A stretch of DNA of 64,000 nucleotides, from assembly GCA_965112735.1 (NCBI GenBank), contig OZ218956.1:1860001-1924000 (forward strand), in the 5' to 3' direction. A program made the position numbers and the translations under genes. Below are positions 48,619-58,339 of this stretch, one piece after another (the first letter of the stretch is position 1; each line of letters begins with the position of its first letter). The notes beneath the pieces were generated by a model. It was not told the DNA's origin and did not search any database. It worked only from the letters and a program-made list of their open reading frames with translations. The stretch is from Phaeosaccion multiseriatum (taxonomy: Eukaryota; Protista; Ochrophyta, other classes).

Positions 48619-49445
48619 ATGTTGAGGATGGGGATGGGAGGATTGAGACGGCGGCGGCCGCTGGTCCTACTGCTGGTACTTCTCTTGAGTAGTCATAAGG
48701 CCTGTGCCTTCGTTGGGCAGACAACGCCAACAGCAGCAGCAGCGAGGACAAGAAGGCGCGGTAGGGCGCCCCCCCCCCACCCACAATGGCAAAGCAGCAG
48801 CCTTAACCCACGCCCTTCTGCACTGGCCGCCATGTGGGACAACAACTACAAGATCGACCCCAAGTTGCTGCACCTTCACGAGCGTGTCAACAATGGGTCG
48901 TTCGGTACGTACTGTGCTCATGTCAACGTTTTTTTTTTTTTTTTTTTTTTTCATGTATGTATGCCTCCCGTCTCTGCCCGTCCTTCTCTGTCGACAGGGG
49001 TGGTCTTCACCGCTGACTTGGAAGGGGTGGGCCCCGTCATTGCAAAGTCTGCAGATGCCATGCAGGTAGATTGGGCAAGGGGCAGTCACAAAAGTCACGG
49101 GGTTTGTCGTGCGCCCTCTCGCCGACGAGGAGGATGTCATGCCTCCTGCCTGCCTTCCCTCCCCTGTTCGCACCTGGCTGTTGCTACTTGCCTCTTCCCC
49201 CCTCCTTCCCACCCTTTCTTTCGTGTGCTTCCCTCTCCACCCGCTGCCATGCATTGTATCTCTGCTGCCCTTGTTACCTGACCCCACCTCCTGCCTCCTC
49301 CTCTCCTCGTTCTGCTGCTGCCGATGCTGCTGCGGCTTCTCTCTCCTTTGCTCCTTCTGTTTGTCTCTCCGTCACGCCTCTGACTATCCCGCGCCTCAGG
49401 GGGAACTGAATGGAGCTCAGGTGGCTCGAGCACGAGAGTACCTCA

Positions 49446-49517
<72 letters not shown>

Positions 49518-52500
49518 GAGTGTGTGTATGTGCGTGTGTGTGCATGTGTGTATGTGTGTGTGTGTTGTGTGTGTCTGTGTGTCTGCGTGTGTTTGTGTGT
49601 GAATGTGTGTGCGCGCGCGTCCGAGAGAGAGAGAGATAGCGGTGGAGTGCGGCCTGTGGTGAAGGCAAGAGATTAGAGTTTTTTTACGGCTCGCTCTTTT
49701 GTCTCCCTTCTTGCTTGCCCCTGACCATGCCCATATGCCTCCTCCTAAGTGTCTCACCCTCGTCCCCCCCCGGCCCTCCCCTTCAACTCAAGGTGGAGGA
49801 GTTTGTGAATAGCAAGATTTCCGGGCCGGCGCGTCCGTGTACGCCCTTCACGGCCCCCTACCTGGGGAGCGCTGTAGTGGATCGAAATAGGTGGGTGGGT
49901 GGGTACGTGGGTGGGTGGGTGGGTGTGTATATGTGGGCGGATGGGGCGACGGGTGGGTGTGTGGATCGGTTCGTGGAGGTTCGGGGGTCGCCCCTCAGTA
50001 GTCTTACGTGCTTGCGTGCATGTGTGCGTGCGTGCGTTTTTGGCTTGGTAGGAGCTACGACCCAACGCCCTACTTCGTCCCGACATTAACCACCCCCCCG
50101 TCCCCTCCTCACTCCTCCATCCTCTGCCCGCAGATGGCGAGACTAACTAAGCACCCACCTTCCTCACTCATGCCTCACCCTGCCCGCAGATGGTGAGACT
50201 AACTGACCACCAACACCCGCCACCCTTCCTTACTCCTGCCTCCGCTGCCCCCCCCCCTGCTTGCCTGCCTTTCTTAGATGGCTGGTGTGGCGTAAGGTGG
50301 GCAGCGGAGTCACTCTCGAGCAGGCTCTCGAGGATGGAAGCTTGTTCCACAGGCTGATGATTGAGGAGGAGGGCGCGAAGGATGATGATGTTGATGATGT
50401 CGATGCTGATGACGACAGTTATGGCGAGGACGAGGACGTAGAGGAAGTGGACAAAGAGGGTGGAGGGAAGGACAGCAACAATAGCAAGAAGAAGAAGAAG
50501 AAGAAGAAGAAGAAGAAGAAGGCATCACAGTGTCTGGGGCTGGGCCGCTCTAGGGCGGAGGCCCTTCAAACGCTGCTAGCTCAGCTCGCCAAGGCCGTGT
50601 CTGCGGTTCACAGGGAGGGCATCGTACACAGAGACATCAAGCCCGCCAATATACTTCTGGACGAGGAGGTGAGTTTGAGTTTGAGTTCAAGAGGGAGAGG
50701 GGACCTCCCGACGGTCCCGGATTTAGTTTCAGATTCAGTCACAGTTTCAGTTTGAGGTTTGAGGGGTGCTGGACTGTCCTCTGCGTTGTATGTCTGAGAA
50801 GGAATGGACTGGGTGTGTGGGGTGACCAGCTCTGCCTACCGTGTGTGGGGTGACTAGCTCTGCCTACCCTGCCCTCCCCCCCCCCTTTCCCCTCTCACCC
50901 TTCCCCTATACTTCGAAGTAAGTTATTATTACATTTACAACTGTATCCCTCCTTTTCCTTTTCCCTTCCCTTCGCCTGCCCTTCCCTCGCCTCTCATCAG
51001 ACGGGATCGATTCGTCTCATCGACTTTGGCTCTGCCGCTGACCTCAAGGGCGCGAGGAAGACGGGCTTCGACAAGAAAAAGGCGGCCTGCAGCCCCGAGT
51101 ACGCCGCTCCAGAGGAGGTAGGTACGCAGGGCCACAGGCAGTGAGTAGGCACACACACCCTGCCTACATTGTCCCTTCACATCCTCACTCCCGTTAGCCT
51201 CTGACCTTGAAACTGACACAGTCCGCATGTTTCCCTCTCTCACTCTCTGTTCACTCCCCCTCCCTTTCCCTCTCCATCTCCCTCTCCCTCTCCCTCTCCC
51301 CTCCCCCTCCCTCCCCTCCGTCGATCAGTTCCTGGACCTGAGCTACCCTTGGGAGTTTGATGTGTATGGCATGGCAGTGACTTGGTTCCGCTGCGCCATG
51401 CCTTATCTACACGACACGTACGTGCAGCACCGCCCCTCCCAACCTCTCCTCTCCTCTCCGGGCCTCACTTCACCTCACCTCACCTCACCTCACCTCACCT
51501 CACTTGCGTCCCCTCCCCTCCCCTCACCTCACTTCACCTCACTTCACCTCACCTCACCTCACCTCACCTCACCTCACCTCACCTCACCTCACCTCACTTG
51601 CGTCCCCTCCCCTCCCCTCACCTCACCTCACCTCACCTCACCTCTCACCTCACTTGCCTCCCCTCCCCTCCCCTCACCTTTCCTCCCCTCCGCTCACCTC
51701 ACATCACCTCACATCACCTCACCTCACCTCTCATTTCACCTCACCTCACTTGCCTCCCCTCCCCTCCCCTCACCTCCCCTCCCCTCCCCTCACCTCCACT
51801 CCCCTCACCTCACCTCCCCTCACCTCACCTTCCCTCCGCTCACCTCACCTCACCTCTCACCTCACTTGCCTCCCCTCACCTCACCTCACCTCACCTCACC
51901 TCACCTCACCTCACCTCACCTCACCTCACCTCGCTTGCCTCCCCTCCCCTCCCCTCACCTCACCTCACCTCCCCTCACTTCCCCTCCCCTCACCCCCCCT
52001 CACACTCACCTCACTACCTCCCCTCCCCTCCCCTCCCCTCCCCCCTCGACCCCCACTCATGCAGCCAGCAGTGGAGCCGGTTCGTGACGGAACTCAAGTC
52101 AGAGGACTTTGACCTCGACTCGTGGCTGCAGGACAAGCTCCAAGAGACAGCCCTCTCAGACGATCTGGTGGAAGGTACGTAAGAGTTGACGTAAGAGTAA
52201 CATGAGGACGTGACGTAATTTCTCCTCACTGCCTCCACTGCCTTACTGACCTCCTCTCTTGACTAAGTAACTAGCATATATATATAATATATATATAAAA
52301 AAATAACTCACTCACTGTCTATCTACCTAACTATCCAACGCACTATTATATGCAGTGACGTCAAGTCAATTGAGGCTGTCGATAATGGTGATCTGACTTA
52401 ACCACCCACCCAACCCCACCCCTCCCACCCCCACTTCGCCCCACCCCATCCCACCCCATCCTACCCACCGCCCCAATCTGCCATCCACTGCCATCCACTG

Positions 52501-57407: not shown

Positions 57408-57439
<32 letters not shown>

Positions 57440-58339
57440 GCCTGCCTGCCGGCCTGTCTGCCTGACGCTGCCTGACTGACGTTAGTGAGTAAGTGAGTGC
57501 CTGAGTGCACTGACACTGAAAGTGACAGACACCGGTAATGTGAAACCGGTGCTGCTCCTGCTGCTTCCCGTTACGAGAAGTTTCTTTCCTCTTCGCTCGC
57601 TGCACTGTGCTTACTGACTGAGTATACGCTCGACTCCAATGCTTTCTCTTGGCAATCTCCCGCCCTCCTCTCCTTCTCGCACACATGTATCTGACTGGGG
57701 CTGGCACGTCATGGCAGGGCTTCACGGCGGCGGAGGCGGCTCGAGAGGTGTGCGAAGAGGCACAGAAGCAAGGTGAGGGGGAACAGGTGTATCCAAGGGG
57801 GGGAGGGGGGTGAGGGGTGTGTGTCGCAGACACCAAGAGGCAGAGGGAGAAGGAAGGATGAGTGGAGTCGAGTGGAGTGGGAGGGAGGAGGAGAAGGAAG
57901 TGAGGGAAGAGAAGGAGGAAGAGGAGGAGGAGGAGGAGGAGGAGGAGGAGGAGGAGGAGGAGGAGCAGGAGCAGGAGGAGGAGCAGGAGGAGGAGCAGGA
58001 GGAGGAGGAGGAGGCGGAAGAGGAGGCGGAAGAGGAGGCACAACAGCACAGCCGACCTGACTGGTCTACTTCAGCCCCTAAGCCGGACAGGCCACCCAGC
58101 GGACAAGGGCTCCACCGCCCCTCTACACTGTCACTGACCGGCCAACTACGGTCCGACTGAAGTGGGTGCTTCGCCCTCCCTCCGTCCCCCTTCTCTTTGC
58201 TTTGTACCCGCTCTGCTATGCTCTTCTCTTCTCTTCTCTTTTCTTCTCTGGTCTGTCCTTCTGTCACTACTCAGGGGCCGCGGACAACATCTCGGCAGTC
58301 GTCATTTATCTGGATGAGGGGATGGGGATGGGGCAGTAG
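48619..58339 (+). CDS. Plastid-targeted STN7/Stt7-like Ser/Thr kinase - PDZ - PP2C phosphatase fusion protein (~21 exons)
   Basis: Signal peptide + ACA-FV + basic transit peptide. Kinase: [58 protein letters not shown]: LEKPLGLSM...[14 protein letters not shown]...[10 protein letters not shown]2C: [53 protein letters not shown]. All junctions are GT-AG and phase-compatible. Confidence 0.85.
51462..52045. repeat. (CCTCA/CCTCC)n pentanucleotide tract, intronic
   Basis: ~580 bp; produces the spurious SPHLT ORFs. Confidence 0.93.
55207..55492. repeat. 34-bp minisatellite x~8, intronic
   Basis: Unit GTGAGTGAATGAGACAGGGTATAGGAGAGGTGGT starting at 55207, 55241, 55275 and so on. Confidence 0.95.
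57312..57480. repeat. (CTGA)n/(CTGC)n tetranucleotide tract, intronic
   Basis: Read directly. Confidence 0.9.

What the first reader, a model, noticed from the sequence alone, without database searches (positions are those of the whole stretch)
48619..58339. Plastid-targeted single polypeptide fusing an STN7/Stt7-like kinase, a PDZ domain and a PP2C phosphatase
Seen: about 21 exons splice in phase (all GT-AG) from a bipartite presequence ([18 protein letters not shown] plus an Arg-rich transit peptide). They run through a complete kinase (~48860-52680), a PDZ (53052-53960) and a 16-aa linker exon (54316-54363) into a PP2C (54941-58339). The PP2C's first exon starts at an acceptor with no ATG of its own. 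Kinase catalytic motifs (K, HRD.K..N, DFG, APE) and the PP2C metal-ligand acids (QED, DGH, KDH, TDG, ADN) are retained. Known: WLVW, DFG.AADL, F...LK...DL..W and G..W.L...ML are typical of the thylakoid STN7/STN8/Stt7 family. In plants these kinases are opposed by separate PP2Cs (TAP38/PPH1, PBCP). Inference: a self-contained writer-scaffold-eraser switch for plastid phosphorylation in a red-lineage plastid. It is probably soluble, since the STN7 TM helix and Cys pair are absent before the kinase domain. I do not know of a characterised protein with this architecture.
Basis: partly seen in the sequence, partly recalled or inferred. Interest (0 to 1): 0.9.

Follow-up and report, generated by a model that had tools for sequence, protein, structure and literature searches.

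The report
Predicted plastid kinase-PDZ-PP2C fusion gene
One 21-exon gene of an ochrophyte alga very probably encodes a single plastid-directed protein carrying a protein kinase, a PDZ-like module and a PP2C phosphatase, but the join rests on splice-signal statistics only, with no transcript or orthologue, and the kinase cannot be filed as STN7.

Summary
All introns are GT-AG, all junctions are in phase, and the product is 896 aa. Exon-level Pfam hits give Pkinase (exons 5, 6, 9) and PP2C (exons 16, 17, 19) in the right order. The middle segment aligns in register with the PDZ domains of E. coli DegQ and DegS (0 of 300 shuffles reach the score).

The kinase-PDZ to PP2C join is supported only in silico:
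- The 48-nt linker exon has real-looking splice sites and codon usage.
- No credible separate start exists for the PP2C.
- The first in-frame Met of the PP2C part lies after two metal-binding motifs.

No orthologue was reachable, because a spliced protein has no reference in these tools.

The N-terminus is a typical ochrophyte bipartite plastid signal (ACA|F), and there is no other hydrophobic helix.

STN7 membership is not established. The lumenal CxxxxC, the transmembrane helix and the stromal CxxxC of STN7/STT7 are absent, and no phylogeny was possible. Kinase-PP2C single polypeptides are already known in oomycetes. The plastid signal and the PDZ are the new elements.

Verdict: probably real (about 0.7), a new variant of a known kind.

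The parts
48619..48904 (+). Exon 1 (aa 1-96). Signal peptide aa 1-30 (48619-48708) with predicted cleavage ACA|F; transit-peptide-like stretch aa 31-72; start of the kinase N-lobe (NNGSFG glycine loop).
   Evidence: the only hydrophobic 19-mer with KD above 1.6 is at aa 13-33; aa 31-72 has 6 R/K, 0 D/E and 8 S/T.
48998..49065 (+). Exon 2 (aa 96-118), kinase strands beta2-beta3 with the VIAK lysine.
   Evidence: donor and acceptor scores.
49400..49447 (+). Exon 3 (aa 119-134), kinase N-lobe.
   Evidence: coding score 0.67 bit/codon.
49793..49890 (+). Exon 4 (aa 135-167), kinase alphaC region.
50278..50668 (+). Exon 5 (aa 167-297): WLVW, an acidic/poly-Lys insert including an (AAG)12 run, and the HRDIKPAN catalytic loop.
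   Evidence: Pfam Pkinase 38.1 bits, profile 98-133.
51001..51117 (+). Exon 6 (aa 298-336): DFGSAADL, activation loop, APE.
   Evidence: Pfam Pkinase E 1.5e-4, profile 135-167.
51329..51417 (+). Exon 7 (aa 337-366), kinase subdomain IX. The alternative donor at 51421 paired with the acceptor at 52068 is also in phase.
52065..52174 (+). Exon 8 (aa 366-403), the F..ELK..FDL..W segment.
52564..52826 (+). Exon 9 (aa 403-490): end of the kinase (RLS..ELL.DPWL) and a Gly/Gln-rich linker.
   Evidence: Pfam Pkinase, profile 238-263 of 263.
53052..53193 (+). Exon 10 (aa 491-538), PDZ-like N-terminal half (PLGLS loop, [10 protein letters not shown]).
53457..53535 (+). Exon 11 (aa 538-564), PDZ-like core ([14 protein letters not shown]).
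   Evidence: Aligned to DegQ 388-418 and DegS 275-338.
53867..53960 (+). Exon 12 (aa 564-595), PDZ-like C-terminal part. Donor GTGAGT; if unspliced, a stop follows at 53991-53993.
   Evidence: Donor 7.4 bits, top 2.5% of 441 intronic GT.
54316..54363 (+). Exon 13 (aa 596-611), the 16-aa linker exon, phase 0 to 0, with no in-frame ATG.
   Evidence: Acceptor 5.6 bits (top 0.5%). Donor 11.0 bits (above all 441 decoys). Coding score 0.63 bit/codon (top 2.3% of stop-free intronic windows).
54941..55108 (+). Exon 14 (aa 612-667), PP2C start: motif I (VQED) and motif II (VFDGHRG). No ATG in frame.
   Evidence: Acceptor 5.7 bits, top 0.5%.
55700..55837 (+). Exon 15 (aa 668-713), PP2C.
56023..56111 (+). 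Exon 16 (aa 714-743), PP2C DGSTA...NCGDSR.
   Evidence: Pfam PP2C 25.1 bits (cutoff 20.3), profile 101-127.
56324..56432 (+). Exon 17 (aa 743-779), PP2C KDH...E..RI..AGG.
   Evidence: Pfam PP2C 17.1 bits, profile 134-156.
56850..56967 (+). Exon 18 (aa 780-819), PP2C RV.G.L.V.RA.G.
57189..57304 (+). Exon 19 (aa 819-857), PP2C VATDGLW.
   Evidence: Pfam PP2C 15.7 bits, profile 197-227.
57718..57772 (+). Exon 20 (aa 858-876), PP2C C-terminal helix.
   Evidence: coding score 0.91 bit/codon.
58275..58339 (+). Exon 21 (aa 876-896), PP2C ADNIS motif and the TAG stop at 58337-58339.

Best explanation
What it is. One nuclear gene of an ochrophyte alga (21 exons, 48619-58339, + strand) encodes an 896-aa precursor. 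It starts with an ER signal peptide, predicted to be cleaved at ACA|F, followed by a basic, acid-free transit-like stretch. This is the standard bipartite signal for import across the four membranes of a red-lineage plastid. The mature protein has no membrane helix. It carries, in order, a catalytically complete Ser/Thr kinase whose C-lobe resembles the STN7/STN8 type, a PDZ-like peptide-binding module, a 16-aa linker and a PP2C phosphatase with its metal-ligand motifs intact.

How it most likely works (inferred). It is a soluble stromal module in which the PDZ tethers the protein to the C-terminal tail or an internal peptide of a partner. The kinase and the PP2C then act on the same local substrates, or the PP2C acts in cis on the kinase activation loop ([31 protein letters not shown] contains Thr and Ser). 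Phosphorylation would therefore be self-limiting and set by whatever shifts the balance between the two activities.

Shown here: the gene model, the domain content, the presequence features and the absence of a membrane helix. Inferred: the use of the exon 12-13-14 junctions, the localisation, both catalytic activities and the mechanism.
For: Gene model:
- All junctions are in phase with GT-AG introns, giving one ORF.

Domains:
- Pkinase and PP2C Pfam hits fall on the expected exons, in profile order.
- The PDZ-like segment aligns in register to the DegQ and DegS PDZ domains; 0 of 300 shuffles reach its score.

Join (splice PWMs trained on the other 18 introns):
- Exon 12 donor scores 7.4 bits, top 2.5% of decoys.
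- Exon 13 acceptor scores 5.6 bits, top 0.5%.
- Exon 13 donor scores 11.0 bits, above all 441 decoys.
- Exon 14 acceptor scores 5.7 bits, top 0.5%.
- Exon 13 codon score is 0.63 bit/codon, top 2.3% of stop-free intronic windows.
- Only 1 AG..GT pair of comparable strength occurs in 6,098 nt of the other introns.
- The introns flanking exon 13 (355 and 577 nt) lie inside the gene's range of 93-647 nt.
- Exon 13 has no in-frame ATG.
- No alternative ATG-first exon in 53962-54940 has a donor within the range of the real donors (best 4.7 and 4.2 bits against a minimum of 5.3).
- The first in-frame Met of the PP2C part is aa 679, after motifs I and II.

Targeting:
- The only hydrophobic stretch is aa 13-33.
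- Phe follows the predicted cleavage site.
- aa 31-72 has 6 R/K and 0 D/E.

Precedent and taxon:
- Single-polypeptide kinase-PP2C proteins exist in stramenopiles. Four P. infestans kinases carry a PP2C domain (PMC3019232). Five P. sojae PPMs carry a kinase domain, each with one mRNA by read mapping (PMC10925823).
- The window's OGT gene is closest (76-77% identity) to Tribonema, Chrysoparadoxa and other ochrophytes.
Against: There is no transcript evidence:
- The only runs listed hold 0.86-0.91 of the words of a stretch that is mostly intron, so they are almost certainly DNA.
- No RNA-Seq run was listed.

No orthologue with this architecture was found. However, the searches possible here were exon-sized and nearly blind.

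A phase 0 to phase 0 join has a 1-in-3 chance of being compatible between unrelated genes. A read-through of exon 12 (stop at 53991) or of exon 13 (stop at 54400-54402) would give a plausible kinase-PDZ protein. A 3-codon start exon (ATG ACT CAA|GTGAAG at 54594-54602) could in principle head a separate PP2C mRNA.

The PDZ is not detected by Pfam on single exons.

Localisation and both activities are untested. The PP2C has GG where most PP2Cs have GD in the RA.GD motif, and WG in place of WD after TDG.
Confidence: 0.68

Rival explanations
1. Two neighbouring genes were joined by the model. A plastid-targeted kinase-PDZ gene ends by read-through after exon 12 (stop at 53991) or after exon 13 (stop at 54400). 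A separate, untargeted PP2C gene then starts in 54403-54940.
For: The gap of 980 nt is about the size of intergenic spacers in this dense window; for example, roughly 500-700 nt separate the divergent C2-domain gene from this gene's ATG. Both read-throughs reach a stop within 10-13 codons. A mini first exon, ATG ACT CAA|GTGAAG, is in phase with exon 14. No RNA evidence is available.
Against: This reading requires several coincidences. The exon 12 donor would be a chance site in the top 2.5% of decoys. The exon 13 donor is stronger than all 441 decoy GTs. The exon 14 acceptor is in the top 0.5%. All three are in one phase. The candidate PP2C start exons have donors of 4.2-4.7 bits, below every real donor in the gene, and encode only 2-3 residues. 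The first internal Met (aa 679) would delete metal motifs I and II. Exon 13 has exon-like codon usage and no in-frame ATG.
Confidence: 0.2
2. The gene is a true fusion, but the kinase is not a thylakoid STN7/STN8-type kinase. It is a generic or lineage-specific stromal Ser/Thr kinase, possibly acting on metabolic or gene-expression targets. The protein would then belong with the stramenopile kinase-PP2C fusion proteins that gained a plastid signal and have no link to light-harvesting regulation.
For: The features that define STN7/STT7 (lumenal CxxxxC, membrane helix, stromal CxxxC; PMC11808413) are absent (Cys list). Exon-level PDB and profile searches return only generic kinases. PMC10089185 states that diatoms have no STT7/STN7 homologues. 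First-reader notes list other kinase-PP2C fusions in the same genome (unchecked).
Against: The C-lobe pattern F..ELK..FDL..W ... GG..W.L...ML......RLS....L.DPW and the DFGSAADL motif match what I recall of STN7/STN8 and are not generic kinase features. This is recalled knowledge, not a test. The plastid presequence fits a plastid kinase family.
Confidence: 0.4
3. The presequence directs the protein to the ER or secretory pathway, or to the periplastidial compartment, rather than to the stroma.
For: Only sequence features support targeting, and no predictor (ASAFind or HECTAR) could be run here.
Against: A signal peptide with Phe at +1 of the predicted cleavage site (ACA|F), followed by a hydroxylated, basic, acid-free stretch, is the established signature of stromal import in ochrophytes (established knowledge; features measured).
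Confidence: 0.12

Closest known systems
Oomycete kinase-PP2C single polypeptides: P. infestans ePKs with a PP2C accessory domain, and P. sojae PPMs with an STKc domain
   Same: A stramenopile lineage, with a eukaryotic protein kinase domain and a PP2C/PPM domain in one protein. For P. sojae, read mapping supports a single mRNA per gene (PMC3019232, PMC10925823).
   Different: Those kinases are classed as AGC, CAMK or OTHER and are cytosolic proteins of non-photosynthetic organisms. No plastid presequence and no PDZ between the domains is reported. Homology to the present gene was not tested.
STN7/STT7 and STN8 thylakoid kinases, with their separate PP2C antagonists TAP38/PPH1 and PBCP
   Same: A plastid Ser/Thr kinase opposed by a PP2C-type phosphatase (PMC2811158, listed). 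The kinase C-lobe motifs resemble STN7/STN8 (recalled, not tested).
   Different: Here both activities would sit on one soluble polypeptide with a PDZ. The lumenal CxxxxC, the membrane helix and the stromal CxxxC that couple STN7 to cytochrome b6f and thioredoxin (PMC11808413) are absent.
HtrA/Deg-type PDZ domains (E. coli DegQ, DegS)
   Same: The segment [25 protein letters not shown] aligns with GKGIKIDEVVKGSPAAQAGLQKDD of DegQ PDZ2 and with the DegS PDZ; 0 of 300 shuffles reach the score.
   Different: It is attached to a kinase and a phosphatase rather than a protease. Similarity is weak (9.3 bits), and Pfam did not report it on single exons.
PP2C-SnRK2 and KAPP-receptor kinase pairs in plants
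   Same: A PP2C that holds a kinase in check by dephosphorylating its activation loop. This is a model for how the fused PP2C could act in cis (established knowledge).
   Different: Those are separate proteins in the cytosol or at the plasma membrane. No cis action has been shown here.

Membership tests
Eukaryotic protein kinase (Pfam PF00069) | Match to the Pkinase profile across the domain | tested here: met
   Exon 5 scores 38.1 bits (cutoff 31.7; profile 98-133). Exon 6 covers profile 135-167 and exon 9 covers profile 238-263 of 263. The whole spliced domain could not be submitted.
Eukaryotic protein kinase (Pfam PF00069) | Catalytic residues: VAIK Lys, HRD..K..N, DFG, APE | tested here: met
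   [15 protein letters not shown] and APE are all present in the translation. In the glycine loop NNGSFG, the first Gly is replaced by Asn.
STN7/STT7 state-transition kinases | N-terminal lumenal segment with a conserved CxxxxC pair (PMC11808413) | tested here: not met
   Only Cys29, inside the signal peptide, precedes the kinase domain. Cys positions are 29, 150, 252, 327 and so on.
STN7/STT7 state-transition kinases | A membrane helix between the lumenal segment and the stromal kinase domain | tested here: not met
   No 19-residue window outside aa 12-36 exceeds KD 1.2.
STN7/STT7 state-transition kinases | A stromal CxxxC motif in the kinase N-lobe (PMC11808413) | tested here: not met
   No two Cys are 4 residues apart anywhere in the model.
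STN7/STN8/Stt7/Stl1 kinase clade (broad sense) | Phylogenetic grouping of the kinase domain with STN7/STN8 against other kinases | not testable with these tools
   No STN7-family sequence could be fetched. Exon-sized queries returned only generic kinases, and the spliced protein has no reference.
PP2C/PPM phosphatases (Pfam PF00481) | Match to the PP2C profile | tested here: met
   Exon 16 scores 25.1 bits (cutoff 20.3; profile 101-127). Exon 17 scores 17.1 bits (profile 134-156) and exon 19 scores 15.7 bits (profile 197-227). All are collinear.
PP2C/PPM phosphatases (Pfam PF00481) | Metal-ligand acidic residues in motifs I, II, VIII and XI (..ED, .DGH, .DG.W, .DN) | tested here: met
   VQED, VFDGH, ATDGLW and AADNIS are present in the translation. 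Assigning them as metal ligands rests on established PP2C knowledge.
TAP38/PPH1 or PBCP thylakoid phosphatases | Phylogenetic grouping of the PP2C domain with TAP38 or PBCP | not testable with these tools
PDZ domain | Profile or sequence match to PDZ domains | tested here: inconclusive
   No Pfam hit on single exons. Local phmmer of aa 486-600 gives 9.3 bits to DegQ and 2.9 bits to DegS, inside their PDZ domains; 0 of 300 and 1 of 300 shuffles reach these scores.
Ochrophyte bipartite plastid presequence | A signal peptide followed by an aromatic residue (Phe) at +1 of the cleavage site and a transit-peptide-like region | tested here: met
   n-region RRRR, h-region LVLLLVLLL, c-region HKACA, then F31. 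aa 31-72 has 6 R/K, 0 D/E and 8 S/T. No dedicated predictor was available.
Single-polypeptide kinase-PP2C proteins of stramenopiles | Both domains on one mRNA | tested here: inconclusive
   Splice and coding statistics favour it. No RNA evidence is available.

The most novel reading that the evidence does not exclude
Ochrophyte plastids, which lack the canonical membrane-anchored STN7/STT7 and its separate TAP38/PBCP antagonists, may instead use a soluble one-chain module. An STN-type kinase and its opposing PP2C would be held together with a PDZ that docks on the C-terminal tails of thylakoid or stromal targets. That would be a self-contained, self-resetting phosphorylation switch for photosynthetic acclimation that has not been described.
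Probability: 0.2. Interest if true: 0.8.

Novelty: new variant of a known kind. Interest (0 to 1): 0.55.

Why it matters
How red-lineage plastids regulate thylakoid and stromal proteins by phosphorylation is poorly known. One paper in the library states that diatoms have no STT7/STN7 homologues (PMC10089185). A plastid-directed protein that joins a kinase, a docking module and the opposing phosphatase would give a concrete, knock-out-ready candidate for that regulation. It would also be a natural example of opposing enzymes fused into one signalling unit. If it is only a mis-joined gene pair, the interest drops to two ordinary plastid or cytosolic enzymes.

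Tried and rejected
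RNA evidence:
- The look-up of sequencing runs on 50200-56200 listed four runs of one study holding 0.86-0.91 of the words, introns included, so they are DNA-like.
- The exon 9 query restricted to RNA-Seq libraries listed none.
They lie in the intron between exons 8 and 9.

Orthologue searches:
- The search of protein representatives with exon 5 returned only generic or multi-kinase proteins matching the HRD region. BLAST of the whole model against these 150 proteins found nothing outside aa 250-450.
- The search for homologous proteins with the stop-free stretches around exon 14 and exon 5 gave no hits.
- The metagenome scan with exon 9 gave no relatives.
- The ESM Atlas with exons 9 and 5 gave only generic kinase fragments.

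Other attempts:
- Exon-level PDB searches (exons 4, 5, 6, 8, 9) returned generic kinases or nothing; a Stt7-type chain never surfaced.
- Synteny: the window's OGT gene found Tribonema minus and other ochrophytes at no more than 77% identity. The Tribonema OGT locus has unrelated neighbours.
- The 624-aa single-exon ORF at 21652-23523 is not on record.

- whole-protein Pfam;
- structure prediction and fold search;
- a full-length homology search;
- exact-sequence look-up.

Rejected idea: LSK (Phatr3_J50052) of Phaeodactylum as a relative. It is an ABC1-family kinase.

Full report
**1. Observation**

From the raw sequence I rebuilt the gene on the + strand. It has 21 exons:

48619-48904, 48998-49065, 49400-49447, 49793-49890, 50278-50668, 51001-51117, 51329-51417, 52065-52174, 52564-52826, 53052-53193, 53457-53535, 53867-53960, 54316-54363, 54941-55108, 55700-55837, 56023-56111, 56324-56432, 56850-56967, 57189-57304, 57718-57772, 58275-58339.

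Every intron is GT-AG and every junction keeps the frame. The CDS is 2,691 nt, encoding 896 aa, and ends at the TAG at 58337-58339. One ambiguity remains: exon 7 ending at 51417 paired with exon 8 starting at 52065, or 51421 paired with 52069. Both are in phase and differ by one residue.

**2. Domains**

A spliced protein has no reference in these tools, so domains were tested exon by exon.

- **Kinase.** Pfam Pkinase hits exon 5 (38.1 bits, above the gathering score), exon 6 and exon 9, at profile positions 98-133, 135-167 and 238-263.
- **PP2C.** Pfam PP2C hits exon 16 (25.1 bits, above the gathering score; profile 101-127), exon 17 (134-156) and exon 19 (197-227).
- **Catalytic motifs.** The translation carries [15 protein letters not shown] and APE in the kinase. 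In the PP2C it carries VQED, VFDGH, DGSTA, NCGDSR, KDH, ATDGLW and AADNIS. Both enzymes therefore look catalytically competent. The minor departures are NNGSFG in the glycine loop, GG for GD in the RA.GD motif, and WG for WD.
- **PDZ.** Pfam does not see it on single exons. When aa 486-600 of the model were compared locally with E. coli DegQ and DegS (L001), the alignments fell inside DegQ PDZ2 (388-418) and the DegS PDZ (275-338), in the canonical register. None of 300 shuffles reached the DegQ score, and 1 of 300 reached the DegS score. Other 115-aa segments of the model scored about zero against DegQ, though one kinase-region control reached 4.3 bits against DegS, above the PDZ segment's 2.9. 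I call the segment PDZ-like with moderate support.

**3. Targeting and solubility**

The N-terminus has a basic n-region (RRRR), a Leu/Val h-region and the c-region HKACA. The only hydrophobic 19-mer above KD 1.6 is aa 13-33. Residue 31, after the predicted cleavage site, is Phe. aa 31-72 have 6 R/K, no D/E and 8 S/T. By established knowledge this is the bipartite signal for stromal import in ochrophytes.

The window's OGT gene is closest, at 76-77% identity, to Tribonema minus, Chrysoparadoxa and other ochrophytes. That fixes the lineage and shows that no close relative sits in the protein collection. After the signal peptide there is no membrane helix, so the mature protein is predicted to be soluble.

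**4. Is it one gene?**

This is the crux, and I could not obtain transcripts.

- The four listed runs hold about 0.9 of the words of a mostly intronic stretch, so they are DNA-like.
- No RNA-Seq run was listed.
I did not send those letters to any search tool afterwards.

I therefore measured the join in silico, training splice-site weight matrices on the 18 introns that do not touch exon 13.

| Site or measure | Score | Rank among decoys |
|---|---|---|
| Exon 12 donor | 7.4 bits | top 2.5% of 441 intronic GT |
| Exon 13 acceptor | 5.6 bits | top 0.5% of 369 intronic AG |
| Exon 13 donor | 11.0 bits | above all 441 decoys |
| Exon 14 acceptor | 5.7 bits | top 0.5% |
| Exon 13 codon log-odds | 0.63 bit/codon | top 2.3% of stop-free 16-codon intronic windows |

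The codon score comes, where exon 13 ranks among the best exons of the gene.

In 6,098 nt of the other introns only one AG..GT pair of comparable strength exists, whatever its phase. Exon 13 is the only in-frame one in the gap.

Further points against a separate PP2C gene:

- Exon 13 has no in-frame ATG. Its only ATG opens an out-of-frame ORF, so it cannot be a first coding exon and is implausible as a 5'-UTR exon of a PP2C gene.
- Among 26 possible ATG-first exons in 53962-54940, the best donors score 4.7 and 4.2 bits. That is below all real donors in the gene (minimum 5.3), and they encode only 2-3 residues.
- The first in-frame Met of the PP2C part is aa 679, after metal motifs I and II.

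I put the single-gene reading at about 0.7-0.8 and the two-gene reading at about 0.2.

**5. Family placement of the kinase**

I recall the same pattern in STN7/STN8: D.GAAADL, F...LK...YDL..W, GG..W.L...M, R.S....L.HP. That is a lead, not a test.

The features that define how STN7/STT7 works are a lumenal CxxxxC pair, a membrane helix and a stromal CxxxC (PMC11808413). All three are absent here. No STN7-family sequence could be fetched for a tree, because exon-sized queries to the representative library, the word-indexed library, PDB and the Atlas returned only generic kinases or nothing. Membership in the broad STN clade therefore remains open. Membership in the functional STN7/STT7 type is not met.

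**6. Comparison with what is known**

Kinase plus PP2C in one polypeptide is not new for stramenopiles. The P. infestans kinome lists four kinases with a PP2C accessory domain (PMC3019232). P. sojae has five PPMs with a kinase domain, each supported as a single mRNA by read mapping (PMC10925823). First-reader notes list two more kinase-PP2C candidates elsewhere in this genome (unchecked).

What I did not find in the paper library is such a protein with a plastid presequence, a PDZ between the domains, or an STN-like kinase. In plants the thylakoid kinases are opposed by separate PP2Cs such as TAP38 (PMC2811158, listed). One paper states that diatoms lack STT7/STN7 homologues (PMC10089185).

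**7. Mechanism (inferred)**

After import, a soluble stromal protein would use the PDZ to dock on a partner's C-terminal or internal peptide. The kinase and the PP2C would then work on the same local substrates. Alternatively, the PP2C would reset the kinase by dephosphorylating its activation loop, which contains Thr and Ser, much as PP2Cs restrain SnRK2 kinases in trans. None of this has been tested.

**8. Verdict**

- The fusion is probable but unproven.
- The STN7 label is not established.
- The architecture is a new variant of a known kind.
- The decisive experiments are cDNA across 53960-54941 and a full-length search of ochrophyte proteomes and transcriptomes.

Noticed in passing
window 50491-50526: An in-frame (AAG)12 microsatellite encodes a run of 12 lysines. 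It sits inside an acidic/basic low-complexity insert of the kinase, between WLVW and the HRD loop, and its length is likely polymorphic.
   Followed up: no
window 51440-52030, 54716-54880, 55200-55480, 57320-57450: The introns of this gene are packed with microsatellite-like and short tandem repeats: (CACCT)n-like, (GTCT)n, a ~30-nt unit GGTATAGGAGAGGTGGTGTGAGTGAATGAGACA repeated about 9 times, and (CTGA)n. The GC skew is extreme (-0.93 at 51500-51999).
   Followed up: no
window 50105-50200: A local tandem duplication of about 45 nt in intron 4 (ccgcagatggcgagactaac... / ccgcagatggtgagactaac...). Each copy carries an AG followed by ATG and GT, so a 3-nt micro-exon is formally possible. It is not needed for the frame.
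   Followed up: no
window 45903-47915, minus strand: A C2-domain gene is oriented divergently from the kinase gene. Its likely first coding exon (..GELYVHIVQGQDLQPCDISGKSDPYVKLKL..) ends about 700 nt upstream of the kinase ATG, so the two genes may share a bidirectional promoter.
   Followed up: no
window 35187-36872, + strand: A large exon of an O-GlcNAc transferase (SPINDLY/SEC-like) gene. Its best database matches are 76-77% identical: Tribonema minus, Chrysoparadoxa australica, and MMETSP and JGI ochrophytes. This places the genome among ochrophytes with no close sequenced relative in the collection. The Tribonema locus shows no synteny.
   Followed up: partly
window 21652-23526, + strand: A 624-aa ATG-to-stop ORF with a Gln-rich N-terminal half. 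It is possibly a single-exon gene. No identical product is on record.
   Followed up: partly
They lie in the repeat-rich intron between exons 8 and 9.
   Followed up: no
window 54364-54480: Immediately after the exon 13 donor, the intron contains a purine-rich GAG/GAA tract (..GAGGAGGAGGGGGAGCAG..GGAGGAGCAGGAGGAAGGGGAAGAGGAGGAG..) and a second GTAAGA 7 nt downstream of the first. That alternative donor would shift the frame.
   Followed up: partly
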